64,000 nt of DNA, taken from IMG/VR virus record IMGVR_UViG_3300028800_000001, positions 186,001 through 250,000 of that record; one strand, written 5' to 3'. The notes below the pieces were generated by a model that was given only the letters and a program-made list of their open reading frames with translations, did not search any database and was not told the origin of the DNA. The position numbers and the translations under genes are program-made. Below, in pieces: positions 21,585-41,739 of this stretch. Every line of letters begins with the position of its first letter. The stretch's first letter is position 1.

Positions 21585-21586
21585 CA

Positions 21587-22831: not shown

Positions 22832-23368
22832 TTATTTCCATTCCCGCGCTTTTCTCTCTTCGTGTATCGCTGCGTAGATCATAAGCGTATCTTCAGGAAT
22901 TTCCAGCGCGCTTGCGAGTGCGTCCATATCACGGCTCACCCGATAACGCTCTAACGCGACTAGAAGATTGATTGCCATTGGCCCGACACTGGCGTCACTG
23001 ACCTTTCGCCTCTGGCGATAAAGATAGGTTGCCACTATATCGGCAAGAAATGCGTCCTCGCGTTCCATTGGTATCGTTACTAAATTATCCATCATTAGCA
23101 CTCCCGTATCGGTGATTTTGTATTCTTCTTTCTTGATGCAAACCAAATGAGCATAAATCCAACGCCGCTAGCGCACCCGAAGATGAGCCCAAAGAAAAAT
23201 CCAATGAGGAACGTTGCAAACATTACTTCTCCTTCCGCAACCTTGTGACGCCATCAATAATCGCATGAAATGCGCTGGCGTCTTTCTTCCACAGGTGCGA
23301 AAGATACATCCACATGGCGGCTGCGCCAACACTTATCCCTGAGAAAAAGCAAAGAAGCACTATAACAA

Positions 23369-23719
23369 TCATGATTGCTGTTCCTCAATCACCGTACTAT
23401 TGAGAACGGTCTGGCCGTTATATATTGCCGTTCCGTCTGCCTCGATTCTGAGATATCTCCCAACGACGGTACTTTGCACCGTATGTCCAAGCGGGGTATT
23501 TATAATTATTCTCTTGATAGTGTCTGGCACGTCGTGGATAGAAATCGTACGCTCTTGCGGCTCGTCCAGACTCTCTACCACCTCTGCCCCATCAAAGGTG
23601 ATATCTTCGCCCACAATGCGTAGCGAACCATCAGGACGACTAGAGGTCGTCACAAAACTGGTGTTCTTCGCAATCATTTCCTGTGCCCAGGTAGGAAGTG
23701 TTGATTTCAGTCTTTTCAT
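23369..23719 (-). CDS. hypothetical protein
   Basis: 116 aa, AAGGAG RBS. Confidence 0.6.
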   Translation of the reverse strand: MKRLKSTLPTWAQEMIAKNTSFVTTSSRPDGSLRIVGEDITFDGAEVVESLDEPQERTISIHDVPDTIKRIIINTPLGHTVQSTVVGRYLRIEADGTAIYNGQTVLNSTVIEEQQS

Positions 23720-23735
23720 GATTTCTCCTTTTTAA

Positions 23736-23828
23736 TGAGTGAGGGAAGGAATCGAACCTTCCACAATCTTCTTTAAAAGATATCCGGTTTACCGGTCGCC
23801 GGACCCATTTCCGTTCTGGCACCCACTC
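23736..23828 (-). tRNA. class II tRNA (Tyr-like) with expanded 11-nt anticodon loop
   Basis: acceptor, T arm and long variable arm intact; loop CGACCGGTAAA. Confidence 0.6.
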
Positions 23829-23897
23829 TTACCTAGTCAGTATACCGCAGTCCTCATCAAAAGACAAGCGTTTTTTCACGGTATTTTCTGAAGAAAT

Positions 23898-23990
23898 AGG
23901 ATCGTGCAGGAGTCGAACCTGCGCCTCTCGTACATCTACGAGCATACTCGCCGTCAGTGGATGTCTCCACCAGTCTTATACGAACGATCC
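23898..23990 (-). ncRNA. tRNA-like RNA with hairpin inserted in D loop and no canonical anticodon loop
   Basis: GGATCGT/ACGATCC acceptor, GCAGG-TTCGACT-CCTGC T arm, CTCGTA-GATG-TACGAG arm. Confidence 0.6.
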
Positions 23991-24938
23991 AAAAACTATG
24001 CCGCTTCCACCAGGATCAGATCACTATGAATAACCTGCTCCAGGCCACGGCTGATACTTACATGAATATTGTAGTATCCTTCAACCTCTGGCAGAGTGAT
24101 TGCGCCTTGAAAGTGTCCAGGGGCAATTTCACGAGGAGCTACAGAATCAACTATCGGCTTATTCTCAAGCGCTGTGTTGCCAGGAAGCTCTTGCTCCCAT
24201 ATCAATGAGACAGATGCATGTGTTCCTGTAACTACTTCGCCACGCGCTGTCTCCACCATAAAATCAAGTGGGAGGACGCTCCCAGGAAAATGACTATCAT
24301 CCAATTCAAAGTGTGCTAAAAACATGATACTTCTTTCTTTAGTATCTCCCCTCTGGAAGCTCTGGCCTATTCTTCTCGAACCACTCCTTTGCCTCGTACC
24401 ACTGGAACCTCATACGACTAAGCCCCTGTGTACATAGGTTCCAGATGTGATACTGCGTAAGTCTGCTAGCATCAATGCTGCCCCTGGCAATAAGCCCCTC
24501 TTCATCGGCAAGCTTTGCGCGAAGGGTCTGATCAATCCAGTCTTCTCGACTACTCATAATTATTCTTTCTCACTTCCCCATTCATCAAAGGACTCTCGTT
24601 AGTATCGTATTTCCTGCATTGCCAATCCTGGCAATGCAAATAGGAGTTTGCATACTCATCTGATACCCTCCACCCTTCCAGCCCTGAAACATCATTCCAT
24701 CACAGAAATAGGCTTTAGCAATCAGTTCCTCTACCGTTTGCGGCGTGGTATTCGGTCTTTTCTGGTTGTACCCAGAGAGATCAAAGCCCAGTGCCAATTG
24801 GTTGTAATCACCACGCCAACTGGCGAAGGCGGTTGGAAACGCCTCTTCAAAATCGAAGTGCACACGGTGCTTTCTGTCTGGCAGCAGTTCTAATGCCTAT
24901 ATCAGTTGTCCCAGGTTCATAATCAGCTCTTTCAATAA

Positions 24939-25012
24939 CACGAAAGGGGTGATTCGAACACTCATCTCACCGTTTTGGAGACGGTTGCTTTAGCCAATTA
25001 AGCTACTCTCGT
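24939..25012 (-). tRNA. tRNA-Trp(CCA)
   Basis: cloverleaf, CT-CCA-AA loop. Confidence 0.85.
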
Positions 25013-25195
25013 ATGAGCAAGGCTAGCGCACGCCATATTCGCGCTGCATAACAGTCCAGGCATCAGCAATTGAAAGTTTCTCACGCTGAATGCGGTATAA
25101 TTCACGCTGGACAGGGGTGAGCCGCTCGTATGCCTCTTGATCAGTCTTTGGTACCATTCTTTTCCTCCAAAAGTCTTTTCTCTTTTATTCTTCTC

Positions 25196-25432
25196 CTACA
25201 AGCGAAAGAAAAAATTCGCCTCTAAACGAAATACCAACTCGCCGTCTTCGCTGCGCACTTCCAAGATGCGCTTCTCATTGCTTTGTTCAAGTAACCATTC
25301 ATATGCGTGGAGCGCGGCCCGTAGCACCTCTGGCTTCGAGACATCCTTCTCTTCGCAGAGTGTTTCCAGACGCGCAAACTGACGATCAGAAAAATCAAGC
25401 TGGACGCGTTGACGTTTTTCATCGTTAGGCAT
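25196..25432 (-). CDS. ribbon-helix-helix protein
   Basis: RVQLDF...SKPEVLRAAL. Confidence 0.65.
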   Translation of the reverse strand: MPNDEKRQRVQLDFSDRQFARLETLCEEKDVSKPEVLRAALHAYEWLLEQSNEKRILEVRSEDGELVFRLEANFFFRL

Positions 25433-25671
25433 TATGATTTCCTTCGCAGAAGATGAAAGAGCGTTGCAACTTCTGTTTGGTACACCAGTTCACCGCTCTT
25501 TTCATGAAGTTCGAATGTGCGCTCTCGATTTTTTGCTAGCCACGCGTACATACGCACTGCTGCGCGTACAAATTCCGGCTTTGTCATTTCTACCTCTTGA
25601 GACAAGGCATCAAACGCTTCAAAGGAAGCAAACACTTGATCAATCTCTTTGATAATTTGTTCTTCGTTCAT
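25432..25671 (-). CDS. RHH-like paralog
   Basis: TKPEFVRAAVRMYAWL similar to neighbour. Confidence 0.55.
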   Translation of the reverse strand: MNEEQIIKEIDQVFASFEAFDALSQEVEMTKPEFVRAAVRMYAWLAKNRERTFELHEKSGELVYQTEVATLFHLLRRKS

Positions 25672-25680
25672 ACCAGTCCC

Positions 25681-25863
25681 TTAGCGTTTCACGTATGCGT
25701 TGATTCCTATAAGCACATTCGTGCCTTCAACCTGCTGGTTACCAGAGGTCGTAGCAACACTAATTGATTTGCCAGTGGCGGTAAGACCACCGCGCTGCGT
25801 GAGATCAATGACGATAGTAAGTTTTTTCTTGTCGTCCGAGACAGTCATTTCGACATTTTTCAT
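25681..25863 (-). CDS. small beta-rich protein
   Basis: MKNVEM...GKSISVATTSGN, strong RBS. Confidence 0.65.
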   Translation of the reverse strand: MKNVEMTVSDDKKKLTIVIDLTQRGGLTATGKSISVATTSGNQQVEGTNVLIGINAYVKR

Positions 25864-25893
25864 TATTTTTTCTCCTTTACAACTATTTTAAAA

Positions 25894-26003
25894 AGTTGTG
25901 CGCAGAGGGATTCGAACCTTCAAGACTTTTCCTGCAACCCCAAGCAGAAAAGCCGTCTGACACATGTCAATATCAGCGTTTCACCAATAACGGTACACAC
26001 AAC
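25894..26003 (-). ncRNA. non-canonical tRNA with ~10-bp acceptor stem and very long variable arm
   Basis: GTTGTGTGTA/TGCGCACAAC, T arm TTCGAAT, ~11-bp extra arm, 8-nt anticodon loop. Confidence 0.55.
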
Positions 26004-26005
26004 AA

Positions 26006-26076
26006 TTCTCCTACCTCGATTCGAACGAGGAACACTTGGTTCAAAGCCAAGCAAGTTACCGTTACTCCATAGGAGA
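26006..26076 (-). tRNA. tRNA-Gln(TTG)
   Basis: cloverleaf, CT-TTG-AA loop. Confidence 0.9.
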
Positions 26077-26080
26077 TCGA

Positions 26081-26150
26081 TAGAGCGTAGCGGGATCGAA
26101 CCGCTCGTACAGGACTACACCTGCCACATCACCAAGATGTGTCACGCCCT
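26081..26150 (-). ncRNA. atypical tRNA-like RNA (6-bp D stem, 6-nt anticodon loop)
   Basis: AGGGCGT/ACGCTCT, AGCGG-TTCGATC-CCGCT, GCAGG-TGTAGT-CCTGT. Confidence 0.55.
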
Positions 26151-26243
26151 CTTGGAACACTCTCCTCGCGACCTTGAGTGCCCATCCACACAATCTGTGA
26201 GTCAGGAGACCGGCGATCAACCCGATATACCCTTTCTCACTTG

Positions 26244-26318
26244 TGGTGCCAGCGGGTAGGATTGAACTACCGACACCGAGCTCTTCACGCTCGTGCTCTA
26301 CCACTGAGCTACACTGGC
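26244..26318 (-). tRNA. tRNA-Phe(GAA)
   Basis: cloverleaf, GT-GAA-GA loop, encoded CCA. Confidence 0.92.
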
Positions 26319-26320
26319 AT

Positions 26321-26472
26321 ACGCGCATGCTGAAGAGTCGAACTTCAGACTTCCCTGCGAAAGAGATCAGGTAGCTACTACTGACGTTTTCCCTCTTTTG
26401 AGCACGCTAGCAACACTTCAAAAGCTGGACTCTTCGCAAAAGCGTGCTTGAGCCACAAACACCCCCGCGCAT
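26321..26472 (-). ncRNA. ~150-nt tRNA-like RNA with large insert
   Basis: T arm CTGAAG-TTCGACT-CTTCAG; AGCACGCT/AGCGTGCT helix. Confidence 0.4.
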
Positions 26473-26477
26473 GATTT

Positions 26478-26930
26478 CTAGTTATTGGCCTCTATAATAG
26501 CGCTCAAACGAGCGCGCTGCTCTGCATCTAGTCGTCCCATCCACTCCACCGTAATTACGCACATATCCTCAAAGCTAAGCTCAATATCGTGAGGCGTTAC
26601 GCCATCAGGGCAATAGCGAAGTACTGTCTTTTCAGGAAGCGCAGTAAAATCCATCGCAAGTTCAGTATTAATCCCAATATTATTGGGATCACCACCAAAG
26701 AGCACATGGTACACTTCTGGCGAAAGCCCCTGAAGGACAAATCCACCCCTGTCATCATCATCGAGATAATATTCATCGTTGATCAAGTCCAGATGATAAT
26801 TGGCTTCCTGCAATCGTCCGAAGACGAGACCGCTCGTAAGAAAGTACACCTCGCCTGAAATGCGGCGACCATCACTGGTATAGACGTACCGCGTCTCTTT
26901 GCGTTCTAACTGATCTTCCATTCTACACAT
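26478..26930 (-). CDS. hypothetical protein
   Basis: ~150-aa ORF in co-oriented run. Confidence 0.55.
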   Translation of the reverse strand: MCRMEDQLERKETRYVYTSDGRRISGEVYFLTSGLVFGRLQEANYHLDLINDEYYLDDDDRGGFVLQGLSPEVYHVLFGGDPNNIGINTELAMDFTALPEKTVLRYCPDGVTPHDIELSFEDMCVITVEWMGRLDAEQRARLSAIIEANN

Positions 26931-27763
26931 CCTTCTTTAAACAAGGGATCAACGTGTACGAGAGAAGTCCCTTTTCCGCAACGCTACAGAGGATCAACTG
27001 ACGCATTGTTTCGCTGAGTCCACGTCCACCCTCGACAGGAAGCACACCGGCATCAATGAGCACCTGCTCTGTACTTCCAAAGAGCCGATGATTATGATCT
27101 TTGCAAAGCTCTAAAAGCTCATAGATGGCAATTGCATCTTTGCGCGCAAACAAACTTTCCAGCACTAAGCGACTTGACATGACTGCGACCATCGGTACCT
27201 GTGTGCCATTGGTCAGCGTTGCCATTTCTATTTCTTCTGTCATAGATATTTTTCTCTTTTCATTTCTTGTTCAAATGCTTCCTCGCGCCTCTCCATACTT
27301 CTATAGCTGCAACTCATATGGTGGTGACAGACGCCGCAAAGATAGAGCGCCGTGTACAGATCTTGCGGTGCATACTTTCCATCAATAAAAGTATAGTCCT
27401 TTTTGTCGCGAATAAGAGCACAAGAGTCACCCTTTTCGCCGCACTCATCGCAGAGATAATGCAACGATAGACTTGGAAGACTGATAAACTGTTCTTGCGT
27501 AAGATTAGTAATCATTCTTCGCCTCCTATTCTTGCATTGATTCGAAATCAGCACGATCACTAGCCGCCCATCCCTGTTCTACATCGGTCTCTGCTTTCCA
27601 ATAGAAATCCTCCCAGGAAAAGCCTTCGCCAGTACTAGAACGAGCACCAATCTTTTTCGCAATCACGTGAATTTTCTCTTCCATTTGTTCAGGTGAAGAA
27701 TGGTGCTCACGAAATTCAATAGTTATTTTCATATACTCCCTCCATATATACCAAGTAATTATA

Positions 27764-27896
27764 TCCAGCTAGAGCGATTCGAACACTCTCCTGCTCCCCT
27801 GTTCGCCTGACTCTCACCAGCCCTGGAGGACCATCCCCAAAGAGGCGAGACAAAAGGCTACTAAGGGGTGCTATGCACGCCATACATCGTAGCTGA
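27764..27896 (-). ncRNA. tRNA scaffold with ~60-nt hairpin replacing anticodon loop
   Basis: TCAGCTA/TAGCTGG acceptor, D arm, CCCCT/AGGGG stem enclosing long hairpin, T arm TTCGAAT. Confidence 0.6.
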
Positions 27897-27926
27897 TCAA
27901 AATATCCTATATCGATATAGGATAAA

Positions 27927-27998
27927 TACCTCATGTGAGACTCGAACTCACGATCTGCTCATTGAGAATGAGCTGTCCTGCCGCTAGACGAATGAGGC
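27927..27998 (-). tRNA. tRNA-Glu(CTC)
   Basis: cloverleaf, TT-CTC-AA loop. Confidence 0.88.
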
Positions 27999-28010
27999 AA
28001 ATGGTGCCAA

Positions 28011-28096
28011 TTTCCAGAGGCAGAGTCGAACTGCCCTGAACCATTATTGCGACTGTACGGCCCCAACTCCGATGGTTGGCTCTCGAAGCTCTGGAA
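28011..28096 (-). ncRNA. tRNA scaffold with 27-nt anticodon insert and reduced D arm
   Basis: TTCCAGA/TCTGGAA, AACCAT/ATGGTT, GGCAG-TTCGACT-CTGCC. Confidence 0.55.
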
Positions 28097-28368
28097 AAGT
28101 GTGCCGTTTCTTGCAACGCGACCATCAGAGGTAGGCACACGCATCGTTCTGCTCTCCGTAGTGTTTTGTGTGCTTACGGATAAACCCACAGACAAGTTGG
28201 CTGCGCTCGACATTCGAAGCACGTGCGATACGCTCTCAATGAAGATGGGCGAAGAGCGGATCATTGGGTACTTGCCAATCCCAATACTGGCAAGCGCAAC
28301 CTTTTTTGTGATGGCGACACGAATGCACGCGTCATTAAACCTGCGTTTCCAGTGCTGGGTACCATCAA

Positions 28369-28442
28369 TACGGGTGGCGAGAATTGAACTCGGCTATTTC
28401 CTGTTTGAAGGACAGGCGGCTCGACCGTTTGCCTTCACCCGC
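28369..28442 (-). tRNA. tRNA-Glu(TTC) (C33 variant)
   Basis: cloverleaf, CC-TTC-AA loop. Confidence 0.75.
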
Positions 28443-28446
28443 AGGT

Positions 28447-28514
28447 TGCGAACAGAACGGAGTCACACCGTCATCTTCCTCTTACAAGGTGCTCTGTTCT
28501 TGAGCTATGTTCGC
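28447..28514 (-). tRNA. degenerate tRNA
   Basis: GCGAACA/TGTTCGC, GCTC..GAGC D arm, short anticodon arm, TGTGACT T loop. Confidence 0.45.
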
Positions 28515-28546
28515 GGTGTACCCGCATCTTCATGCTTCGACACCAG

Positions 28547-28617
28547 GAGACGAATGTAGGAGTTGCACCTACACGGGAGGTCATGACGCTCCTCGTAACC
28601 CTGCCGGTTCCTCGTCC
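28547..28617 (-). tRNA. degenerate tRNA (CAT anticodon?)
   Basis: GGACGAG/TTCGTCT, T arm TGCAACT, GT-CAT-GA. Confidence 0.4.
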
Positions 28618-28984
28618 AAATAAGAAGTTCACGTATGCATTGTCTACATCAGCCGCAAACGATGTGGTAGCGTGCATCGCCAGCAGCAAAGGTGTTGCAC
28701 CTTCTCTTCATAAACTTCTTTGTCAAAGGCCGATGGACGTTAACCGTTTATCCTCGCCGTCGCTTGCGAGGCACCTTTGGACACCCGTAATGCTCTTCTG
28801 TTGTACTTCCAAAAGAACTGCTAGAAATAACGTCAGTAGTCGCATTGTTTTTTCATGCTTTCGCATGACGGAATAAGTCACATGCGGGAGTCCCTTACTT
28901 CTCATGAATAAGTAGTGCGCATGCTAACACGACACAAACCTCCATACACTTTCTACTGACGGCTTGACCCATTACTGAGTCAAA

Positions 28985-29056
28985 TCTAGTTGGCTGGACT
29001 TGAACCAGCGACCTCTCGCGTCCGAGGCGAGTATGCTACCGCTGCACCACAACTAG
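28985..29056 (-). tRNA. tRNA-Pro(CGG)
   Basis: cloverleaf, CT-CGG-AC loop. Confidence 0.9.
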
Positions 29057-29061
29057 AGATA

Positions 29062-29153
29062 TTGGACACCCTGGATTCGAACCAGGACAGGTGATCAACC
29101 TGCTACTTCCATTTTCATGCCCAATTACAGCATAGTCTAGAATACTGCGTCCA
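29062..29153 (-). ncRNA. atypical tRNA-like RNA
   Basis: TGGACGC/GTGTCCA, CCTGG-TTCGAAT-CCAGG, extra hairpin; no canonical D or anticodon arms. Confidence 0.45.
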
Positions 29154-29209
29154 GCCCCCCATTTCCCATCAAAGGAACTTTGAATGAATAGCCAGGAGGA
29201 CACCGGCTA

Positions 29210-29259
29210 AGGACAGAGAAGGACTTGAACCTTCTGACACCCAAAACGTGTGCCTATCC
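29210..29259 (-). ncRNA. tRNA minihelix-like element
   Basis: acceptor plus T arm (TTCAAGT) with one short hairpin. Confidence 0.35.
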
Positions 29260-29270
29260 GCAAGAAACAA

Positions 29271-29345
29271 GGGTGACTATCCAGATTTGAACTGGAGTTA
29301 GGAGAGCCACAATCTCCTGTGTTAGACCACTACACTATAGCCACC
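29271..29345 (-). tRNA. tRNA-His(GTG)
   Basis: cloverleaf, TT-GTG-GC loop, G-1. Confidence 0.9.
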
Positions 29346-32665: not shown

Positions 32666-33142
32666 TTATCCAGCGCATAGCTCTGCCTCCTGCTCTATCA
32701 CCCGCCATACGTGGCGAAGTATCTTTGGATAGTTATGTTTTGTTTTCGTTCTATGAAGATAGACTAAATGCGCTATCGCTTCAGACTGCGTACAACGATC
32801 AGCCTGTGGATAGGTAGCTGACGGCTCATAAATCATGCCACGATGCCCATCAAAGACATCCTGAAAGCCCTCAAAAGTAGCTGCGTACTCCAAGAGGGTT
32901 GGATGCTTTCGTAGGTACGCATGCCAGAGCAAGAGATAGTATTCATGCTGAATGATAATAGCGGGAATATAGGTGGCGTCCAGTAAAAGGAAGGTGGCCT
33001 GCTCTCCTTTGGGCTTTTTATAGGGATAGCCATTCTCGTTACGTTTAGCATCTTGATACCATTGTTCAATCGTGCGTACTCCAAGATAGGCATAAAGCGC
33101 ACTAAAGCGATGATCGCCTTTGGAATCGCATCGTAAAATCAT
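32666..33142 (-). CDS. possible NADAR-like protein
   Basis: SKGDHRFSALYA...TIEQWYQxxK...LWxxYLRxHPxLL pattern resembles NADAR fold. Confidence 0.35.
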   Translation of the reverse strand: MILRCDSKGDHRFSALYAYLGVRTIEQWYQDAKRNENGYPYKKPKGEQATFLLLDATYIPAIIIQHEYYLLLWHAYLRKHPTLLEYAATFEGFQDVFDGHRGMIYEPSATYPQADRCTQSEAIAHLVYLHRTKTKHNYPKILRHVWRVIEQEAELCAG

Positions 33143-33486
33143 GCCAGCACCTCGCAATAGCACTCTGGCGGAAACGGAAGCGTGTTCGCATCATCATCTT
33201 CATGCAAACTTGTCCAGTTGCACGCGGCACATACCGGATAACTCCCTGCAAACTCTTTCCAGGGCTCCTGCACTATCTCTTGTTTACCGCAGCGTGGGCA
33301 CTTCCCCTGCTCCAGACAAGATGTACACGGATACTGTTTTAATTCTCCCCAATAGTCTTTGCTATAGGTAAATCCATCGGCACCGCAGGCAGTGCAATAG
33401 TCTGGATAGCGGCTTTGGAACCGTGTCTTGCGCGCTCGTGCGATGCCTGCGTATTTGCGGCAGAGCGCGCTATGCGTCTTATTCAT
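33139..33486 (-). CDS. Cys-rich Zn-finger protein
   Basis: YPDYCTACG..PCTSC..GKCPRC; paralog of 47493-47960. Confidence 0.6.
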   Translation of the reverse strand: MNKTHSALCRKYAGIARARKTRFQSRYPDYCTACGADGFTYSKDYWGELKQYPCTSCLEQGKCPRCGKQEIVQEPWKEFAGSYPVCAACNWTSLHEDDDANTLPFPPECYCEVLA

Positions 33487-34057
33487 AGCGGATTATTCCA
33501 TCCTCTTTCCTTACTGGGACATCGTAATCAAAAGGCATTGCAAACCCTTCGTGCAGCCGCACCTGTTCCAGGTAATATTGCATGTACGTTGTTGTGCGTG
33601 CCTGAAGGCCAAGGTAGAGGTACATCCCAAGCGTGTCTGCTGGATCGGGCTGCTTCGTTTCTGTAACAAAGGCGTCGCGCTCTTCTTCATAGCCGAAGGC
33701 AGAAGCCAATTGCGCGAGTGCGGCGCGCTTCTCGTCTTCGTAGGAACTGCGTAGCCCCATCACGAGTGCCTCATACATCTCGCCGCGTGCTTTGGCAATT
33801 TCATGCGTAAAGCGGTTGGCAAAATACTCCATAAGCCCTGAATCATTATCATAGCGAAAGTTCGGAGAGTATTTCAACTCCTCTTGATAACGCTCTTCAT
33901 CGCCGCTGTCGGCATACATATCTTTCACAAACATCTGTCGATCTGACTGCTCAGGCAGCACCTCTTGCAAATCAAAGTCGTTGCAGCCGTGATTGCTAAA
34001 TCGGTCAGACGCCAGATCAAGCAGCGCAACTAACACTTTCTTCTCGTAGTATTTCAT
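33479..34057 (-). CDS. hypothetical protein
   Basis: 192-aa ORF. Confidence 0.6.
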   Translation of the reverse strand: MKYYEKKVLVALLDLASDRFSNHGCNDFDLQEVLPEQSDRQMFVKDMYADSGDEERYQEELKYSPNFRYDNDSGLMEYFANRFTHEIAKARGEMYEALVMGLRSSYEDEKRAALAQLASAFGYEEERDAFVTETKQPDPADTLGMYLYLGLQARTTTYMQYYLEQVRLHEGFAMPFDYDVPVRKEDGIIRYE

Positions 34058-35199
34058 GTTTCTGTTCTTCTTTCTTTTTTAGAATACTTGTACACAGTTC
34101 TTCAAATTGGTCGGAAACTGCTTCAGCGGCCTCCAGGCCAGCACTTTTCTCTACGGCTTCAAGAGCGACCAGGATCGCACGCATTTCTTCAAAGGTAACT
34201 CCTCTGCTCCATGCGGCACACCAGGAAGTTTGCCAATACGCACGAAGGAATTCCATTGTATGTATTCTTCCTCCTTCTACAAACTGTACCAGATCTTTGC
34301 TATCGTACTCACGTCACGAAAGTGAAACCACGCTAAAAGCTTCGCACCATCGCCTGAACCTTCAGTTGCCACATCATTATTCTGAAGTGCCCAAAAGCGA
34401 AACGTGTGACCACCAACAAGATCTTCTACAATATACTGTACATCCCCAATCCAGGTCTGCGCCTTATTTCCAGCACTACGTGCCAGGGCAACACGCATCG
34501 CGACACCGTCCGGCTTGCTTTCGTTTCGCATTAGTATTGCTCCTCATCTTTCAGAACCCAAATTCCATCTTCACCTAGTATTTTCACTTTTCCTGGCACC
34601 ATCAATTCATCATCCGGCTCATCGAGCGCCCCCAATCCGTGTATAGGACCATAGAGATCAACTTCATTGAGACGTGCAAAGATTTGAAATGCTTGCCCCA
34701 TTTGCAGCATCTCATTGTGACCTCCATCAGCAATATATAAAAGCATCTCTTCTCCTTCTAAGAAGAGAAAGGAAACGCCGGTCTTCCTGTGAAAGAAGAC
34801 GCCAAGATGCCTGAGTGTTTCTGGCATTTCGCCACGCGACCACATATACGTAGCATAAAAGGTCTGCTCACCGTACTCTTGTGCTACCTTTCTCTGTAAA
34901 CTGTTCTTTTCCATTTTTGCTCCTTGTTGGAATTAATTAATTAATTATTTTTTCTTGAACGCGAGAAAATTATTTTTTAAAATTAATTAATTACGCGAGT
35001 TCACGTTCAAGTTCAATACGTCCACGCTCAATCGTGGTATAGATACGATGCTGGTCTTCCAAAATCGCTCGTAAGTCCATCATGCGATAATAGGCTGCTC
35101 CACGCACGTCGGGAGACAGCCCATTATCATTGACGACCACCATCAGCTTTTGGACGCGCTCAAAGAGCTCTTGCTGCTGTGCGGTCATACTCATGCTCC

Positions 35200-35712
35200 T
35201 TATACGTAGACGACCACGAGTATTCCGGCAACCGGATCAATAGAAACGATCTGAAATTCGGTTTCCAGCCAATCGTTCGGCAGAAAGTAATCCTTTATAT
35301 ACGAGCCTGGGGCAATAGAGCCTTGCTCGTATTGGTATTCATAGCCGTACTTACATACTCCTACAACCTGATCGTTGTTACTCATAATCTGGTTGTCAAG
35401 ATCGGCACGAGAAAACACTTCCACCGTCCAAAATTCCGAACAATTTTCATACCCGACCGACCATGTAGGGCAAGGGTTATGAACATCAGAACAAGGCAAT
35501 TTCGGCTGTGGCGCTGGCACAGAAGTGGCTGTTGGCTGTGTTGGAGGATCAACCAATGTTGGATTGACATCCGCATGCGCTGTTTTCACATTGACGGCCA
35601 AAGCGAGGAATAGAGAGACAAACAAAAGGGAAGCAAACACGATTTTCTTCAAATGAAGACTCCTCTCTGTATATGGAACATCCTTTCTATCAGAATAGCC
35701 CATTTTTCTCAA
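35200..35712 (-). CDS. secreted/exported protein
   Basis: signal peptide with AHA cleavage motif, P/T-rich linker. Confidence 0.55.
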   Translation of the reverse strand: MRKMGYSDRKDVPYTERSLHLKKIVFASLLFVSLFLALAVNVKTAHADVNPTLVDPPTQPTATSVPAPQPKLPCSDVHNPCPTWSVGYENCSEFWTVEVFSRADLDNQIMSNNDQVVGVCKYGYEYQYEQGSIAPGSYIKDYFLPNDWLETEFQIVSIDPVAGILVVVYV

Positions 35713-35744
35713 GGAGTCAACATTTTTCTTATCATTTTCAGAAG
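35692..35744 (-). promoter_or_regulatory. sigma70-type promoter with upstream box
   Basis: TTGACT-17-TATTCT, TTCTGAAAA. Confidence 0.65.
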
Positions 35745-35869
35745 AAAGTCCATTCCCAGATTCCCCGATTCCCCACTTTTTTGAAGAAGCGTATTTTTTC
35801 TTGCAAAAGGCAGAATTTTCTTCTACAATGGGACATCTCTAGTCGCCTACCAACGAAACGGACAAGCCT

Positions 35870-36226
35870 ATGTCAACGACAGACAATCTTTTCTCTTCTT
35901 ATCCCAATACGGATAAAGAGACAGTTCCCAGCTCTCTTGCGCTCCTCCAGCGCATTGAGTTTGAGCAGTATCTTGCCCACGACTTGAAAAAATATTATTA
36001 TGCACAGCTCGCTATCCACGGCGTCCTGCTGCTCTGGCTTCTCGCCCTCATCTTACTCTTTATTTTAAATATTGGCAGGGAGTTGCTTTTCTTCTGCGCG
36101 GCAATCGCGGTCCTTGTTCTTCTGCTCTCGCTGTGCATCACGCACTTCTACCACGAAGCTGTGAAAAGCAAAGACCGCTATGAACGGCTGGTTAAAGACT
36201 TAAATACCCGTTCACGAAACCAGTGA
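35870..36226 (+). CDS. two-TM membrane protein
   Basis: 118 aa; TTGCAA..TACAAT promoter upstream. Confidence 0.6.
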   Translation: MSTTDNLFSSYPNTDKETVPSSLALLQRIEFEQYLAHDLKKYYYAQLAIHGVLLLWLLALILLFILNIGRELLFFCAAIAVLVLLLSLCITHFYHEAVKSKDRYERLVKDLNTRSRNQ

Positions 36227-36696
36227 TGAAACAATTGATCGTCTCTTTGTGGGTATAACATTCAAGCGCCTGGAAAAACGCGGCATCAATGAGCGTCTTC
36301 CCTAAAATTAGTTTGCCCTTCTTCTCGTGATACTTGCGTAGCTCCAGGCCGTAGGCAATGCCTACCTTCCAAATGTCTTGTTGTCGATTCAAGGCCAGCA
36401 TCTTCGTGCTCCTTTCAAAAACAACCGCAGAATGCGGCGTTTACTCTTCTTCTTTTCCTAACATTTTCTTCAAGCGCGCTATTTTGCGTACCACACACCA
36501 CTCTTCATGACTGTGATCAAGCTCCCTGCGAAAGCTTTTGCGCACGTGGCAACAGCCACACTCATAGCGCGACATCGCCGCATTCTGATACACAATCGCC
36601 TGATCCAAATCCGCAAGAATTTCCAGGCCAAGTGTGGCCTGTGCCTCTTTTTCTTTGTCCATGCATTTTTCCTTCACTTTTCTTGACTTCCCACTT

Positions 36697-36751
36697 AGTA
36701 TAGGCCAGTGCCGAAAAGAAGTCAAGAAAAAGTTCATTGTATTTTCAGAAA
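36697..36751 (-). promoter_or_regulatory. sigma70-type promoter with upstream box
   Basis: TTGACT-17-TATACT, TTTCTGAAAATA. Confidence 0.75.
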
Positions 36752-36754
36752 GAA

Positions 36755-37039
36755 TTAAAGGAGTCCTCCAGCTTGCTTGGCACGCTTAATCAGCTCACGC
36801 ATAAACTCATTACGATTCATGCGTGCACGCTTGCCCTCTGCACGCATTTGCTTTTTGTGATCCACCACCATGCCGTCAAGCGCATCAAGCAACTCGTCAT
36901 CGAGATAGAGCGTGACTTTCTCTTTCAGTTTTACCTTTTTACCGTTCTGCGGTTGTACCGGTATGACATCATTGTCTTGGAACCGCGCCTGCTGCTCTTT
37001 AACAGCTACATCCCAGGCTGACGGCTTGCGTTTGTTCAT
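36755..37039 (-). CDS. ParG-like ribbon-helix-helix partition adaptor
   Basis: KVTLYLDDEL..ALD..MNRNEFMRELI; overlaps parA stop. Confidence 0.7.
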   Translation of the reverse strand: MNKRKPSAWDVAVKEQQARFQDNDVIPVQPQNGKKVKLKEKVTLYLDDELLDALDGMVVDHKKQMRAEGKRARMNRNEFMRELIKRAKQAGGLL

Positions 37040-37806
37040 TGGCGCACCCTTTCTCCCAGACGCACTGAGTCCTGAATAAGCAGTGTTGCCAGATCATCCC
37101 ATAGAACACCAAGAGAAGGATCAATATCAAAGATGTCTGTTTGGAAGCGCACTGCCCTTTTGTAGTCAGTCTTACGTGGCACTGGCGTTTCATAGACGAG
37201 CTTGCCGTATTGTCTGCGAATACTGGTCAGGCAATCCACGTCTTCTTTCTCGCGTGAGCTAAAGAGTGTGGGTAAAATGTACCAGGGATAGAGCTCTTTA
37301 TTGAGCTCAGTGTCATGCACATCTTTGATGTGTCCAAGAATATAAGGAAGGGTGCGGATCGCCATCACTTCACAGGCCACCGGAATGAGGACACTATCAG
37401 CAGCAGTGAGTGCGATACGGGTAAGCACACCAAGCGTCGGTGGACAGTCCAGAATACAATAATCATAATCGGTTGCATATTCGCGCAACCTTCTACGTAA
37501 CGAATGCTCAAAATTGGTTTTCGATGGCAATTCAATTTCGGCTGCGGCCAAGTCCAATGTGGTTGGCAGAAGATGTACAAAACGCCCAAGAGGGAAGGGC
37601 ACAATCTTCACGCCACTGATAATAAGATCATACGTGGTTTCCTTGAGGTCAACGGGCCTCACAAAGTATTCTGTGAGCGAGCTCTGTGGATCAAGATCAA
37701 CCATCAAGACACGCTTGTCCTGACGCGCTAGCGCAGCAGAGAGGCTGACGGTTGATGTGGTCTTCGTCACTCCCCCCTTCTGGTTGGCAATCGCATATAC
37801 CTTCAT
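37036..37806 (-). CDS. parA: ParA/Soj family ATPase
   Basis: NQKGGVTKTT deviant Walker A, DLDPQ, ILDCPP. Confidence 0.93.
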   Translation of the reverse strand: MKVYAIANQKGGVTKTTSTVSLSAALARQDKRVLMVDLDPQSSLTEYFVRPVDLKETTYDLIISGVKIVPFPLGRFVHLLPTTLDLAAAEIELPSKTNFEHSLRRRLREYATDYDYCILDCPPTLGVLTRIALTAADSVLIPVACEVMAIRTLPYILGHIKDVHDTELNKELYPWYILPTLFSSREKEDVDCLTSIRRQYGKLVYETPVPRKTDYKRAVRFQTDIFDIDPSLGVLWDDLATLLIQDSVRLGERVRQ

Positions 37807-37847
37807 ATAGGTTTCCTTTCTTTATTCTTTAGATACACGTTTTACAT

Positions 37848-38717
37848 CTAACTCGCTTTGTAACGGAGCCAAGACTTTACTCTTGGATGTGCTTGATGAT
37901 AACGTTCCAAATCATTGAAAATTTCTTTTTTACGCTCCAAACACACTGTCGATCCGGTATACAAAAATTCAGAGAAAACAAGAAGGTTCTCTCTCCTCCC
38001 TGATAATGGTAAGAAGAATGCGTTTGACTGCTGATTGCGATATATGCACAATGTCTCAATGCCGCGCTCCTCTAATTCTGTTTTCAATCTTTCTAAGAAC
38101 GATTGGCTTCCACCAATGAAACGGCAGATAGTTTCTGTCCAATTACTTCCGCCATTTTTCCTGTGACGTTGATAGACTGTTCCATCGCCATCAAAGTATC
38201 CTCGAATGTATGCCGATAATAAATGCTCAGGAAAATCAGTGGGCCAGGATAGTTGCAACGTCTTGTTTGGAACAATGCCCCAACGAGCAAGAGCCGTTGC
38301 AAGTGGAGGATCATAAAGACACAGTATAGCTGCGCTAGAGCCTCCCTTTCCTCCAAAGCGAATAGCAGATTTTGATCCCACGCCATCTCGAAAATTCTTC
38401 ATATGATCTGCATCAGATTGTTGGAGATGAAGTTGTACTCTTATACTATTCTTCCCGTCCTCATAGATACAACCATCAGCGGCAAGAAAGCCTATCCAAT
38501 AAGCATGCCAATCATCAGAAACATCGAGAAACCCAGACGAGTCTATATAATTTCTCTTAATATAGTGTCCATGCGGATTTTGCTCAATTTCATGCACTTT
38601 CATATGCTTCGATATTGTTGACTCAGCATACCCTGTGGCTCTGGAAATTTCCCTTATGCTCTCCCCGCCAACGGCATATCGCTCGTAAAGAGATTCTTTC
38701 GTAAGCGACTCCCTCAT
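37848..38717 (-). CDS. free-standing LAGLIDADG homing endonuclease with N-terminal HTH
   Basis: YWIGFLAADG and YIRGYFDGDG motifs. Confidence 0.88.
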   Translation of the reverse strand: MRESLTKESLYERYAVGGESIREISRATGYAESTISKHMKVHEIEQNPHGHYIKRNYIDSSGFLDVSDDWHAYWIGFLAADGCIYEDGKNSIRVQLHLQQSDADHMKNFRDGVGSKSAIRFGGKGGSSAAILCLYDPPLATALARWGIVPNKTLQLSWPTDFPEHLLSAYIRGYFDGDGTVYQRHRKNGGSNWTETICRFIGGSQSFLERLKTELEERGIETLCIYRNQQSNAFFLPLSGRRENLLVFSEFLYTGSTVCLERKKEIFNDLERYHQAHPRVKSWLRYKAS

Positions 38718-38852
38718 AATAACCTTGCCGCGCTTGCAGTATCCATTTTCAACAGGCATCATAGTGCCCCTGGTTGGCAATCGCATATACTTTCATACAT
38801 ATTTCCTTTTCATGTAAATTTTACCGTGAAGCGGTTTTACCGTTCTACTGGT

Positions 38853-38881
38853 AGAGTACACAAAAAGGTTCAACCTGTCAA
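38853..38881 (-). promoter_or_regulatory. par operon promoter with downstream TTTTACCGT repeats
   Basis: TTGACA-17-TACTCT; repeats at 38819-38846. Confidence 0.6.
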
Positions 38882-41739
38882 GACTTTTTTCTGAAGGAAC
38901 AAATAAGAAAAAGGTCATACTTTGGCGTAAAAGCAAGGCATCTATGTTATACTGGCGTTACTGTTGGTACAACACCCGACAGATGTGGAAAATAATAGCA
39001 GGGTAGCAACTCATGCGCATCAGCATGTAGTAACTACCCTCTCGTTTTTTACGCTTCTTCTTTGAGCGCTCTCTCACGCGCTGCCTGGGCTTTCGCATTA
39101 TTAGTCAATCGATCTGCATAGCCGTGTACATATTCTTCTACAAAGAGCGCAATAGCCGCGCCATTCTTGCAACATGGTTTTGCCAGCTCCAACGCTGCGC
39201 TGCGCTGCTCTACTTCACTTTGCTCAGGCCGGTCACCAGTAAGATAGGTATAGCCACAACTGTAACCAACATTGCCTGATTCATCGGTGTCATAATACAT
39301 GCGTGTTCTCGCTTTCGTTTTGTGAAACTTTTTCATCTTAAATCTTTTCAACCGCTTCGATGATATACTTGATCGATGCCTGTTCTGCTTCGTGTTTAGA
39401 AACCAGATCAAAGACAAAGGCCAGCAAGATGCCACCTTTCATACGCAGCCCAATCGCCTCTTCATCATCGTTCGGAAAAACCAGAAACCAGAGATCATAC
39501 GAGCTGATAAAGTATGGTCGCTTCTCTGTGACAAGCGTCACACCAAGAAAAGAGCTCCATTCAACGTGCAGTACTGGCAGCATTGGATAGGGATGCTCAA
39601 TATCTTCCACGAAGAAATTATGATTCTCATCTTTTTCAACGTTCAAGCGGAAACTATCTAACTTTCCCTCTGCCGTCCACCAGGATACCTTGAGTAGATT
39701 TTTCACTTGGTACGCTCCTTCCAAACACGTACCAACTCATCATCTTCCAAGAGTGGAGCCAGCATATAGCGAAATGCCAGATTGTCGCCAGTGCGCGAGA
39801 AGCTTTCTAATGAATAGCTGGAAACGCGCATGAGGAGTGTCTCAAATTGACGCACCACACAATCATCCTCCATCATGACATCTGGCTTGCGAAAGAGTGT
39901 CATCGCGTACATCTCTGCATATTTTGCGTAGCGATGCCCAAAGACCTGTTCGCCAATCGTCTCAGGATCGTAGACATTGTCCTCTATCGTGACAATCTCC
40001 GAGCGCTTCACCTCTACGTTCATCAACTCAGCGCCTTGATAGTGCATGTGCTGCAACTCTTTGAGCCAATACTTACTGGTTGCAATACGCGCCATCTCAC
40101 GTGCCAGGGTGCTTCCCAGCTCTGCAAAATCTTTCGTGGCATATTTCATAGTAAGGCTCCCGTGTTTGCGGTATGCCAGAAGTGGCTTTCCTAATTCTTC
40201 GCTCATGAAAATCTTCCTTTTCTTATCGGTTTTCTCACCAACTCTAGAGGACACCAGGGATATTCTGCGTACTCCAGATTAAGGCGAACACTTTCGTACT
40301 TCACATATTCTAAAAACGCTACTTCTTTCTCTTCTGCGGTCGCGTCCTTGCGAAGCACCTGTTTGTACCAGACAGCCTTTTGAATGATCTTGACTACGTC
40401 TTTGATCACTGAGATGCTGTCCCACCAGCCCACACCATCATAATTACGGTACAGCCGTCCAAAGCTGTAGGTGTCCTTCCCCTCCTGTATAATCTGCTCA
40501 GCGATATCCAGAAAGATTGCGCTACCTGTAGTGATTTCTTCGCCATTCACCGTACGATAATACACAAAGTTTGCCATTAACTTCCTCCAATCGTACCGAC
40601 ATACCACGGCGCTTTCGCGTACTCCAAGTCAAGGCGAACATGTTCTAGCTTGACGTAGTCTAAGAAAGCGCTATCCTTATGTTCAAGTGTCTTTGCAGAC
40701 AATAAAAATTGATAAATTAATGCTTTGGTGATCAACTCCAAGACCGAGCGCATATCTTCATACTCATCAAAGTGAAAGGAGAACGCCGCGTCGTCTGCCA
40801 CAATGCTGACAAAGGTATAGCGCTCAGTGCGCTTTTTCTCCGCAATCGCATAGGAAGCTGCACGAAAGAAATCGGGAAAGTTGTTGACGACGGCCTCATG
40901 ATTGAGGACACGTGAATAGGTAAAAATCATGCTGGTAGTTTCCTTACTTGAATATCTGCAAGCGCTGAGAGATACGTAATCATGCCATTCTTTGCTGCGC
41001 CATCTTCTAAAAGCATTGTTTGATAAATCTTATTCTTGAGCGTGTGCTGCGCAAGGTATTTATGACACGCTGGAACATTGCCAAGAAACTGCTCAACCGG
41101 TTCACCTTCTAAAGAGGTGACAGCGATAAGCTGAAAAGAATACTCTTGCTCAGCATGCTTGACAGCCGCAATGACGGCCTCTGGAAAGCTTTGGTACTCT
41201 TCTGTGGTCAACCCTTTTGCACCGCCGTAGCGATTGCGGTAGATGATTTGCGCGTGCTTTACGCCCCGAATACTATCAATTTGAAATGCGGTCACTTCTT
41301 CAAACCCAAGGCATGCCTCTCCCTCATCACCAAACACCGCAAGGATTTCGACATCAATCTCTTTGTCCATTTCACAGGCAGTGCTACACGCTTCGACAAA
41401 GCTCTGACGAGCCATTGTCCGTATAGGAAGCTCAGGGCTGACTCGATAGACGAGACAGGCAGTCATAACTATTCTCCTTATCTTGCGAAGATGTGGCGGA
41501 ATATCACCCCATCCTCCACATCTTCATATTCAAAAATCTCACGGAGCCACTCAAAGGCTTCGCGCATCACCATATACTTTTGCGCTTCGATCTGGTCATC
41601 CAGAAAATCCGCAATGTCGTCCTCACTGGGCAAGACAGGATAATTCTCAAAAAGAAATTCCCACGCGGTTGCAATCGCTGTTTCTTTTGAAGACGAATCT
41701 TCATTATTGCTGCGCTGATTGCAAAACTTGTAAAATGCT

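What the first reader, a model, noticed from the sequence alone, without database searches (positions are those of the whole stretch)
37780..38810. LAGLIDADG gene inserted into the parA 5' end with duplication of the displaced start
Seen: MKVYAIANQ codons plus RBS occur twice, at 37780-37806 (intact parA) and 38770-38796 (now the 15-aa mini-ORF MKVYAIANQGHYDAC), with 21 bp identical and the endonuclease gene between them. The break lies just before the Walker A motif. Inference: an intron-less, intein-less homing element that repairs its host gene by carrying a replacement 5' end.
Basis: partly seen in the sequence, partly recalled or inferred. Interest (0 to 1): 0.6.

Follow-up and report, generated by a model that had tools for sequence, protein, structure and literature searches.

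The report
Homing endonuclease cassette replacing parA's start
A selfish endonuclease gene has landed in the first codons of a giant phage's partition gene (parA) and keeps that gene working by bringing a spare ribosome-binding site and first nine codons; related endonucleases sit at this same spot in parA genes of many unrelated bacteria and plasmid-like contigs.

Summary
The RBS plus nine parA codons occur twice, exactly 990 bp apart (40 nt, 90% identical). An intact two-domain LAGLIDADG gene (304 aa) lies between them and a full-length parA follows.

Contigs of the same 327-kb phage from other rhizosphere samples settle the main question. One lacks precisely these 990 bp, and empty and occupied alleles coexist in single samples. 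No intron (Rfam blank) or intein (stop codon, no Hint domain) is involved.

Homologues at 35-52% identity lie directly upstream of a parA gene in 12 of 12 contexts, against 0 of 237 for remoter LAGLIDADG loci. Four loci carry a clear displaced parA stub and two more are suggestive. The stub always breaks at the Lys codon that opens the Walker A box (N-Q-K|G-G), and in several loci it is fused in frame as the endonuclease's own N-terminus.

Two points remain open. The occupied allele keeps the presumed target intact in its working copy. The observed empty allele is a chimera (native RBS, downstream-copy codons), so it could be either the ancestral state or a secondary loss.

The closest known analogue is the fungal mitochondrial mobile endonuclease ORF that carries a replacement C-terminus. 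This is its mirror image, in prokaryotes.

The parts
38819..38858 (-). Iterons (8-bp period, GGTAAAAC-like) between a -35-like TTGACA (38876-38881) and the parA RBS. Presumed operator or centromere-like site of the par operon. It lies upstream of the displaced stub, so it is the native control region.
   Evidence: Repeat family D1. The same motif lies upstream of parA in the HEG-less relatives L010 and L011. The promoter assignment is inference: the consensus scan did not call it.
38770..38809 (-). Upstream copy of the repeat: native-type RBS plus parA codons 1-9 (the displaced stub). It differs from the working copy at codon 2 (AAA vs AAG). In contigs L006 and L007 it also differs at codons 5 and 8 (GCA, AAT). 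All three differences are synonymous.
38749..38796 (-). 15-codon mini-ORF (MKVYAIANQ + GHYDAC + stop) that starts at the old parA start codon. Its stop overlaps the endonuclease start (ATGATG at 38762-38757), an arrangement typical of translational coupling (inferred).
   Evidence: Gene callers in other assemblies start the endonuclease at this ATG (304 aa).
37848..38762 (-). Free-standing single-chain LAGLIDADG homing endonuclease gene, 304 aa. It has an N-terminal three-helix HTH (about residues 22-56), a linker, and two LAGLIDADG domains (motif helices 84-96 and 179-193) with the acidic residues D96 and D193 present.
   Evidence: Pfam. Family alignment A1 with invariant D96 and the G-Y-F-D-G motif. 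AlphaFold model pLDDT 86.9. Foldseek top hits are I-Tsp061I, I-OnuI, I-SmaMI and I-AniI. PDB profile search hits 2dch at E 4.8e-7.
37807..37847 (-). 41-nt spacer after the endonuclease stop, carrying the replacement RBS (AAAGGAAACCTAT) for parA and an iteron-like TGTAAAAC. It is absent from the empty allele.
   Evidence: This RBS is closer to that of the HEG-less relative L010 than to the phage's own upstream RBS.
37780..37819 (-). Downstream copy of the repeat: replacement RBS plus parA codons 1-9 of the working gene.
37802..38791 (.). The 990-bp presence/absence polymorphism as delimited against the empty allele. The position is ambiguous by 6 nt (TATGAA). Read instead as an insertion after codon 9, it is 37780-38769.
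   Evidence: L004 versus the window. A contig in run X3 joins 37801 to 38792, skipping 990, with 6 letters fitting either side.
37036..37806 (-). Intact parA (256 aa), a deviant Walker A partition ATPase.
   Evidence: Pfam AAA_31, CbiA, MipZ. It is the single copy in the 327-kb genome. The protein is identical in empty and occupied alleles.
36755..37039 (-). 94-aa ribbon-helix-helix protein gene overlapping the parA stop (ATGA). It is the likely ParG-like centromere-binding partner.
   Evidence: Pfam RHH_1 at E 9e-4, below the curated cut-off. Its position and the gene overlap are read.

Best explanation
This is a free-standing LAGLIDADG homing-endonuclease cassette belonging to a family specialised on the 5' end of parA genes. 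Proposed mechanism: in a parA without the element, the enzyme makes a double-strand break at the DNA encoding N-Q-K-G-G, the 5' edge of the Walker A box. Repair from an occupied genome then copies the endonuclease gene together with a short spacer, a new RBS and a fresh copy of codons 1-9. The old promoter, RBS and codons 1-9 stay upstream as a stub. The stub serves as the left homology arm and as the translation start for the endonuclease. Here it is a 15-codon leader ORF that overlaps the endonuclease ATG; in several relatives it is fused in frame. parA is rebuilt behind the replacement RBS, so no RNA or protein splicing is needed. Shown: the anatomy, the precise 990-bp presence/absence polymorphism, an intact endonuclease fold and acidic residues, and the family-wide linkage and break point. 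Inferred: cleavage at that site, gene conversion as the route of insertion, translational coupling, and co-transcription from the par promoter.
For: Anatomy and repeat. Empty allele: L004 is the same phage with an identical ParA and 99.4-99.8% identical flanks, and lacks exactly 990 bp. Occupied alleles sit on two backbone haplotypes, and the empty allele shares its backbone with occupied L006. Run X3 holds both a contig that skips the 990 bp and contigs covering the endonuclease. Run X2 shows assembly breaks at both repeat copies plus an empty-path contig. The endonuclease looks intact: model pLDDT 86.9, Foldseek E 9e-10 to monomeric LAGLIDADG enzymes, D96 and D193 present. Family linkage: 12 of 12 informative contexts of homologues at 35-52% identity have parA directly downstream on the same strand. 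The figure for remoter LAGLIDADG loci is 0 of 237. Displaced parA stubs upstream of or fused to the endonuclease: window, L016, L175 and L013 are significant, with 0-2 of 300 shuffles reaching the score. L176, L177 and the protein N-termini of P0176 and P0177 are suggestive. The break always lies within about 3 nt of the Lys codon of K-G-G. No intron: Rfam is blank at E<=1 over 36500-39500 and at gathering score over the window.
Against: The working copy in the occupied allele is identical to the empty allele from the ATG onward. A roughly 22-bp target centred on codons 9/10 would therefore survive in the occupied genome, and self-immunity is unexplained. Against the only empty allele seen, the indel boundary maps to TATGAA at the start codon rather than to codon 9/10. 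No stub was detected in 5 of the 12 family loci (L012, L014, L015, L095, L179). There is no enzymology, no RNA data and no known host.
Confidence: 0.72

Rival explanations
1. The element is the same, but the polymorphism reflects loss, not gain. On this reading the sampled empty allele arose by recombination between the two repeat copies, or by conversion without insertion. It is as immune as the occupied allele, and the truly sensitive parA allele (stub-type codons AAA, GCA, AAT) has been swept away. The endonuclease would then be in the post-fixation, decay-or-loss phase of the homing cycle.
For: The empty allele is a chimera: the stub's RBS with the working copy's codons. This would also explain why the occupied allele keeps an intact junction sequence. 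The three stub-versus-working-copy differences in L006 and L007 are all synonymous third positions, as expected of two diverged functional alleles (about a 4% chance by position alone). The window-type stub (one difference) looks like an intermediate between the L006 type (three differences) and full homogenisation, which would favour deletion. The replacement RBS resembles that of a related phage (L010), suggesting that the downstream copy is the imported one.
Against: A deletion yielding the observed chimera must cross over inside 6 nt (TATGAA) rather than in the 21-nt identical core, unless a fully converted intermediate existed. All empty forms seen (L004, X3, X2) are of this one type. The HEG-less relative L010 shares the 20-mer around the junction with the working copy, so GCG/AAC may simply be the ancestral state of this clade.
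Confidence: 0.35
2. In this phage the cleavage and insertion site is at the parA start codon rather than at codons 9/10. The target would span the native RBS, the ATG and codon 2. The 9-codon stub would be part of the mobile element, a leader inherited from an earlier host, and only the RBS and ATG would be replaced.
For: The indel against the empty allele is bounded by TATGAA on both sides. A site covering positions -5 to +6 is the only short sequence present in the empty allele and absent from both copies of the occupied allele: AAA in the stub, three changes in the replacement RBS. All four occupied contigs carry AAA.
Against: In every family member that has a stub, homology breaks at the Walker A edge, which is what an insertion at that point predicts. 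A 5' UTR is a poorly conserved target and could not explain the family's spread across ParAs that are only 25-37% identical.
Confidence: 0.15
3. The LAGLIDADG protein is a domesticated DNA-binding regulator of the par operon, comparable to WhiA, and not an active mobile nuclease.
For: It is always first in the par operon and carries an extra HTH or AP2 DNA-binding domain. A few family members have Asn in place of the second acidic residue (P0145, P0153, P0162).
Against: There is a precise presence/absence polymorphism in otherwise near-identical genomes, with duplication of the host gene end. Both acidic residues are kept here and in most members. parA relatives of this phage work without it (L010, L011).
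Confidence: 0.06
4. The insert is a group I intron, an intein, a transposon with a target-site duplication, or an assembly artefact.
For: The length is a multiple of three (990), and a LAGLIDADG ORF is typical of introns and inteins.
Against: Rfam finds nothing, and only 7 and 41 non-coding nt flank the ORF. The stub frame stops after 15 codons and there is no Hint domain. No transposase or terminal inverted repeats are present, and the repeat is 40 nt and imperfect. The structure is reproduced in at least four independent assemblies.
Confidence: 0.02

Closest known systems
Mobile endonuclease ORFs (mORFs) of fungal mitochondria that create 'gene hybrids': Allomyces macrogynus atp6; Glomus atp6, atp9, cox2, nad3; Rhizopus atp9; Mortierella cox2 (described in PMC3630166). 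Related cases occur in Tremella fuciformis (PMC7315562).
   Same: An endonuclease ORF (LAGLIDADG or GIY-YIG) is inserted in a protein-coding gene without an intron or intein. The element carries a copy of the gene segment it displaces, so the host gene stays whole. The native segment is left behind as a duplicate. Imported and native copies differ in sequence.
   Different: Those elements replace the 3' (C-terminal) end and leave the native end downstream. Here the 5' end plus an RBS is replaced, and the native start is left upstream, where it is reused to start the endonuclease. Those hosts are mitochondria; here they are a jumbo phage and bacterial or plasmid-like contigs. The target is one conserved motif of one gene family (the ParA Walker A).
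Free-standing homing endonucleases of T4-like phages and intronless homing (SegF, SegG, MobE, reviewed in PMC2988022; mobE in PMC2790892; listed, not read in full). From my own knowledge: mobE splitting nrdA in phage Aeh1.
   Same: A phage-borne endonuclease gene outside any intron or intein that spreads by break repair with co-conversion of flanks, and that is polymorphic among related phages.
   Different: Those genes sit between genes, or split a gene into two functional pieces. They are GIY-YIG or HNH enzymes that cut at a distance. None is reported to duplicate the target gene's start. Here the enzyme is a LAGLIDADG inside the coding region, with a rebuilt 5' end.
Intron- and intein-borne monomeric LAGLIDADG enzymes (I-Tsp061I, I-OnuI, I-SmaMI, I-AniI).
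   Same: The fold and the two-motif single-chain architecture. By family knowledge, a 20-24 bp asymmetric site cut at the insertion point is expected.
   Different: There is no surrounding intron or intein, and there is an additional N-terminal HTH domain (AP2 in some relatives). Sequence identity is only 8-18%.

Membership tests
LAGLIDADG homing endonuclease (single-chain, two-domain) | Two LAGLIDADG helices, each ending in an acidic catalytic residue | tested here: met
   Motifs end at D96 and D193. D96 is invariant, and the second motif G-Y-F-D-G-[DN]-G is conserved across 25 homologues.
LAGLIDADG homing endonuclease (single-chain, two-domain) | Alpha-beta-beta-alpha-beta-beta-alpha fold, present twice | tested here: met
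   Model pLDDT 86.9. Foldseek E 9e-10 to 1e-7 against I-Tsp061I, I-OnuI, I-SmaMI and I-AniI. Pfam LAGLIDADG_3 is above its cut-off.
LAGLIDADG homing endonuclease (single-chain, two-domain) | Site-specific double-strand cleavage of the element-free allele | not testable with these tools
   This needs purified protein and substrates.
Mobile homing element | Presence/absence at one precise site in otherwise homologous genomes | tested here: met
   L004 versus the window, L005, L006 and L007. Both forms occur within run X3.
Mobile homing element | The same homologous site is occupied in unrelated genomes | tested here: met
   12 of 12 family contexts lie at the head of a parA gene. The break falls at the Lys codon of K-G-G wherever a stub is visible.
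Mobile homing element | The occupied allele lacks the target (self-immunity) | tested here: inconclusive
   The working copy equals the empty allele from the ATG onward. Only the RBS and codon 2 distinguish the alleles.
Group I intron | Conserved ribozyme core and exon ligation | tested here: not met
   No Rfam match at E<=1 or at gathering score. Only 7 and 41 nt of non-coding flank remain. The exon start is duplicated, which an intron does not need. Splicing itself was not tested, because no RNA runs exist.
Intein | In-frame insertion with Hint splicing blocks | tested here: not met
   The stub frame stops after 15 codons, the endonuclease is in another frame, and there is no Hint or Intein_splicing hit.
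Fungal mitochondrial mORF gene-hybrid elements | An endonuclease ORF plus a carried copy of the displaced host-gene segment | tested here: met
   In relatives the copies are diverged (L016, L175, L013).
Fungal mitochondrial mORF gene-hybrid elements | Replaces the 3' end of a mitochondrial gene | tested here: not met
   Here it is the 5' end of a phage or bacterial parA gene. It works like these elements but is not a member of that set.
ParA/ParG-type (type Ib-like) partition locus | Deviant Walker A ATPase followed by a small RHH centromere-binding protein, with iterons | tested here: met
   AAA_31 E 4.8e-46 and KGGVTKTT. An RHH_1 hit at E 9e-4, which is weak and below the cut-off. 8-bp iterons lie upstream. 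Partition function was not tested.
IS or transposon | Transposase, terminal inverted repeats, short exact target-site duplication | tested here: not met
   No inverted repeats at the ends, and the repeat is 40 nt and imperfect. The only ORF is the LAGLIDADG gene.

The most novel reading that the evidence does not exclude
A previously undescribed prokaryotic class of 'gene-start-replacing' homing elements. These would be a family of LAGLIDADG endonucleases (with HTH or AP2 add-on domains) that home into the Walker A edge of ParA genes across phages, plasmids and chromosomes. The roughly 27-nt conserved N-terminal coding stub would act at once as the homology arm and as the endonuclease's own translation start, under the autoregulated par promoter. 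The elements would carry a spare RBS and 5' end so the partition gene survives. Such elements could also act as weapons between competing replicons by cutting a rival's partition gene.
Probability: 0.45. Interest if true: 0.75.

Novelty: new variant of a known kind. Interest (0 to 1): 0.62.

Why it matters
It shows a third way, besides introns and inteins, for a homing endonuclease to live inside an essential coding region in prokaryotes: it brings a replacement gene end. The evidence is a natural empty/occupied polymorphism plus a whole family with the same site. The work identifies the ParA Walker A edge as a homing site. It supplies a set of natural meganucleases that may recognise variants of one conserved motif. 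It explains a class of odd annotations, namely LAGLIDADG proteins whose N-termini look like ParA. It also raises a clean, testable puzzle: how does the occupied allele avoid self-cleavage when the junction sequence is rebuilt? For phage and plasmid biology, it suggests that partition genes are a battleground for selfish nucleases.

Tried and rejected
The following led nowhere or were ruled out.

- Word-based scans of viral contigs with ParA or the endonuclease alone found no close kin. An IUPAC pattern for the stub found nothing in viral contigs, where own records are excluded.
- Relatives cannot be drawn for a virus record.
- Scans with the family alignment in GTDB genomes, metagenome contigs and viral contigs returned mostly remote LAGLIDADG genes. 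These served as negative controls, with 0 of 237 next to parA.
- No RNA runs hold the locus, and all nine runs are Logan contigs. Expression, splicing and allele frequencies could therefore not be measured, and contig depths were not interpreted.
- The promoter/terminator consensus scan gave nothing convincing. The TTGACA upstream of the iterons has only a weak -10, and no terminator separates the endonuclease from parA.
- SNP density around the insert is uninformative. There are no SNPs among haplotypes between 40937 and 36074 apart from the stub and one private site, but the empty allele shares this clean zone and SNPs are clumped genome-wide.
- Literature searches for a homing endonuclease in parA found nothing relevant.
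- Intron, intein, transposon and artefact readings were rejected (see rivals).
- The large representative protein search was not run because the word search sufficed. No complex prediction was run because no binding claim is made.
Full report
**What the window is.** The window is bases 186001-250000 of a 327,295-bp virus record with direct terminal repeats, rated complete. It encodes a phage portal protein, a Mu-F-like domain, a Ro60/TROVE protein, GmrSD-like proteins and a C5 methylase, plus ten tRNA genes. All contigs and runs that hold the locus come from rhizosphere metagenomes. The genes discussed here lie on the minus strand.

**The observation.** The repeat finder gives a direct repeat at 37780-37819 and 38770-38809: 40 nt, 90% identical, spacing exactly 990.
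- The upstream copy is an RBS followed by ATG AAA and seven more parA codons. It then leaves the parA sequence and stops after 15 codons (MKVYAIANQ-GHYDAC).
- The downstream copy has a different RBS, ATG AAG and the same seven codons. It continues into a complete 256-aa ParA whose Walker A (KGGVTKTT) begins at codon 10.
- Between the copies lies a 304-aa ORF (38762..37848) with a Pfam LAGLIDADG_3 hit and a weak HTH hit.
- parA is followed by an overlapping 94-aa RHH gene (weak Pfam hit). Eight-bp iterons lie upstream of the stub, as they do upstream of parA in two HEG-less relatives.
- The genome has only one parA and one copy of this endonuclease.

**A natural empty allele.** Looking up the exact ParA protein returned nine contigs. 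L005 equals the window. L006 and L007 are occupied alleles on a slightly different backbone. L004, a 17.8-kb contig from another sample, has the same genes on both sides but no endonuclease. Alignment shows that it lacks exactly 990 bp and is otherwise 99.4-99.8% identical.

Laying public contigs on the locus gave further support. Run X3 contains both a contig that joins 37801 to 38792 (skipping 990, with 6 letters fitting either side) and contigs covering the endonuclease. In run X2 the assembly breaks at both repeat copies and includes a short empty-path contig. The insert is therefore a real presence/absence polymorphism within one phage population. The endonuclease occurs on two backbone haplotypes, and the empty allele shares its backbone with occupied L006.

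**What it is not.**
- Not a group I intron. Rfam finds nothing in 36500-39500 at E<=1 or in the whole window at gathering score. Only 7 and 41 non-coding nucleotides flank the ORF, and an intron has no need to duplicate the exon start.
- Not an intein. The stub's frame stops, the endonuclease is in a different frame, and there is no Hint domain.
- Not a transposon. There is no transposase and no terminal inverted repeats, and the repeat is long and imperfect.

**The endonuclease.** Twenty-five homologues align over the full length, with invariant D96 and a conserved second motif. The AlphaFold model (pLDDT 86.9, pTM 0.76) has an N-terminal three-helix bundle, a flexible linker and two LAGLIDADG domains. 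Foldseek ranks monomeric LAGLIDADG enzymes first: I-Tsp061I at E 9e-10, then I-OnuI, I-SmaMI and I-AniI. A PDB profile search agrees. It looks like an intact single-chain enzyme, which by family knowledge would recognise an asymmetric site of about 20-24 bp.

**The family result.** The word search found about 60 homologues at 35-52% identity and 270-400 aa. Every informative context examined has a parA gene directly downstream on the same strand. These are P0124, L012, L013, L014, L015 and L016 in GTDB genomes (a Chloroflexia and a Pyrinomonadaceae MAG), L095, L175, L176, L177 and L179-L182. With the window, that makes 12 of 12. L178 ends at the endonuclease and is uninformative.

None of 237 remoter LAGLIDADG loci from the same three scans (identity up to about 35%) has a ParA match in its flanks. 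Even so, the contrast is stark. The associated ParAs are only 25-37% identical to the phage's and lie in varied surroundings: transposases, a DnaB with an intein, a replication-initiator gene.

**The stub recurs and breaks at one place.**
- In L016 the endonuclease ORF begins MKTIVLANAK and then diverges. The parA that overlaps its stop begins MKVLVLANAK-GGTGKTT.
- In L175 an AP2-LAGLIDADG protein begins MKTIAIAKQK, and the parA reads ...VIAIANQK-GGVGKTT.
- In L013 a separate RBS plus nine codons (MATVVSIAS) lies about 105 nt upstream of the endonuclease, and the parA begins MTTVTSVASQ-KGG.
- L176 and L177 begin with ParA-like leaders. So do the proteins P0176 (MRTIAIANQK) and P0177 (MNVLAIAAQ).

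In a shuffle test, the eight residues before K-G-G were matched against the region upstream of the endonuclease core. The window, L016, L175 and L013 stand out, with 0-2 of 300 shuffles reaching the score. L176 and L177 place their best hit at the ORF start but are not significant by score. L012, L014, L015 and L095 show nothing, and none was seen by eye in L179.

Wherever a stub is visible, homology ends within about 3 nt of the Lys codon of N-Q-K-G-G. In most relatives the two copies differ at both synonymous and non-synonymous sites, as expected if one copy travelled in with the element. Some members (L012, L013, L179) also carry a small RHH-like ORF between the endonuclease and parA. In P0155 and P0157 a similar RHH segment is fused in front of the endonuclease.

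**How it most likely works.** The enzyme probably cuts HEG-less parA genes at the Walker A edge, a sequence conserved because it encodes the P-loop. Repair from an occupied copy would use the parA body as the right homology arm and the promoter plus first codons as the left arm. It would copy across the endonuclease gene, the spacer, the new RBS and the fresh first codons. parA therefore remains whole without any splicing.

The old start is reused. In frame-fused relatives it is the endonuclease's own start codon. In this phage it opens a 15-codon ORF whose stop overlaps the endonuclease's ATGATG, behind a GGGG Shine-Dalgarno-like run. This suggests coupling to parA's native, presumably autoregulated, initiation signals. 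No terminator-like element separates the endonuclease from parA, so one operon transcript is likely. All of this paragraph is inference from anatomy and from established homing biology.

**Open problems.**

First, self-immunity. From the ATG onward, the working copy in the occupied allele is identical to the empty allele. Any target lying wholly within parA therefore survives insertion. Three ways out are possible:
- The sampled empty allele is itself resistant or a revertant, and the sensitive allele carried the stub-type codons. In L006 and L007 the stub differs from the working copy at three positions, all synonymous third bases (AAA, GCA, AAT), as two diverged functional alleles would. The replacement RBS is closer to that of the related phage L010 than to the phage's own.
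- The site extends to the RBS and start codon. This is the only short stretch unique to the empty allele, and the indel boundary against L004 is indeed TATGAA.
- The extra HTH domain reads DNA further upstream.

Second, direction. The empty allele is a chimera of the stub's RBS and the working copy's codons. It is equally compatible with an ancestral, never-invaded gene whose stub later picked up donor markers, and with loss by recombination between the repeats. The alleles L006-type (24 of 27 identical), window-type (26 of 27) and empty can be read as a series in either direction. L010 shares the 20-mer around the junction with the working copy, which mildly favours GCG/AAC as the clade's native state. 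I could not resolve this.

**Comparison with what is known.** The closest analogue is the mobile endonuclease ORF of fungal mitochondria. It inserts in atp6, atp9, cox2 or nad3 together with a foreign C-terminal segment and leaves the native C-terminus downstream (Allomyces and Glomus; PMC3630166). Related gene-fragment exchange is described in Tremella (PMC7315562). The present element works in the same way but is a mirror image. It replaces the 5' end, with an RBS. It occurs in a phage and in bacterial or plasmid-like contigs, and it is tied to one motif of one gene family.

Free-standing phage endonucleases (Seg, Mob; listed) share the intron-less homing logic. To my knowledge they sit between genes or split a gene, and do not rebuild a gene start. 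Full-text searches found no report of a homing endonuclease in parA. That is absence of evidence within the held library only.

**Verdict.** I rate it a new variant of a known kind, with interest about 0.6. The decisive experiment is a cleavage assay on the two possible empty alleles and on the occupied junctions.

Noticed in passing
window 13486-16368 (-): The 960-aa portal protein gene (Phage_portal E 6.5e-71, plus a Mu F-like domain) contains an Intein_splicing domain at residues 336-466. This is a second, independent selfish element in the same phage.
   Followed up: no
window 16750-18648 (-): A phage-encoded Ro60/TROVE protein with a vWA domain (E 1.4e-64 and 4e-29). No Y RNA or other partner RNA reached the Rfam gathering score in the window.
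   Followed up: partly
window 20435-29344 (-): An array of ten tRNA genes, all on the minus strand.
   Followed up: no
window 54470-63285 (+): Two GmrSD_N-domain proteins (56903-58447 and 61606-63285) flank a C5 cytosine methylase (59560-60903). This looks like a defence or anti-defence cluster.
   Followed up: no
window 36921-36960 and 38819-38858: The same 8-bp-period iterons (TTTTACCG on the plus strand) occur upstream of the par promoter region and again inside the 5' part of the RHH gene. Similar CGGTAAAA repeats precede parA in the relatives L010 and L011. They are possibly operator and centromere sites.
   Followed up: partly
window 5947-12531 (-): Six consecutive ORFs of 318-345 aa lie on one strand. 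The three that were tested have no Pfam hit. They may be tandem paralogues.
   Followed up: no
L012 3848-4027, L013 3827-4030, L179 1727-1915: In one branch of the endonuclease family, a conserved 59-67-aa RHH-like ORF (motif VNRGY.LREDL ... KLY.V.EEA) overlaps the endonuclease 3' end and precedes parA. In P0155 and P0157 a similar segment is fused to the endonuclease N-terminus. It is unclear whether it belongs to the element or to the par operon.
   Followed up: partly
L014 1-2375: A DnaB helicase gene carrying an intein with its own LAGLIDADG domain lies just upstream of the endonuclease-parA pair in this unrelated contig.
   Followed up: no
window 33100-41700 compared with L004-L009: SNPs between phage haplotypes are strongly clumped, for example 41007-40937, 36074-36031 and 34230-34199. 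A 4.8-kb zone around the par locus (40937-36074) has none apart from the stub and one private site in L004 (40063). This suggests mosaic recombination between co-occurring strains.
   Followed up: partly
P0145, P0153, P0162 (alignment A1): Three family members have Asn in place of the second catalytic Asp (G-Y-F-D-G-N-G). They may be inactive or nicking variants.
   Followed up: no
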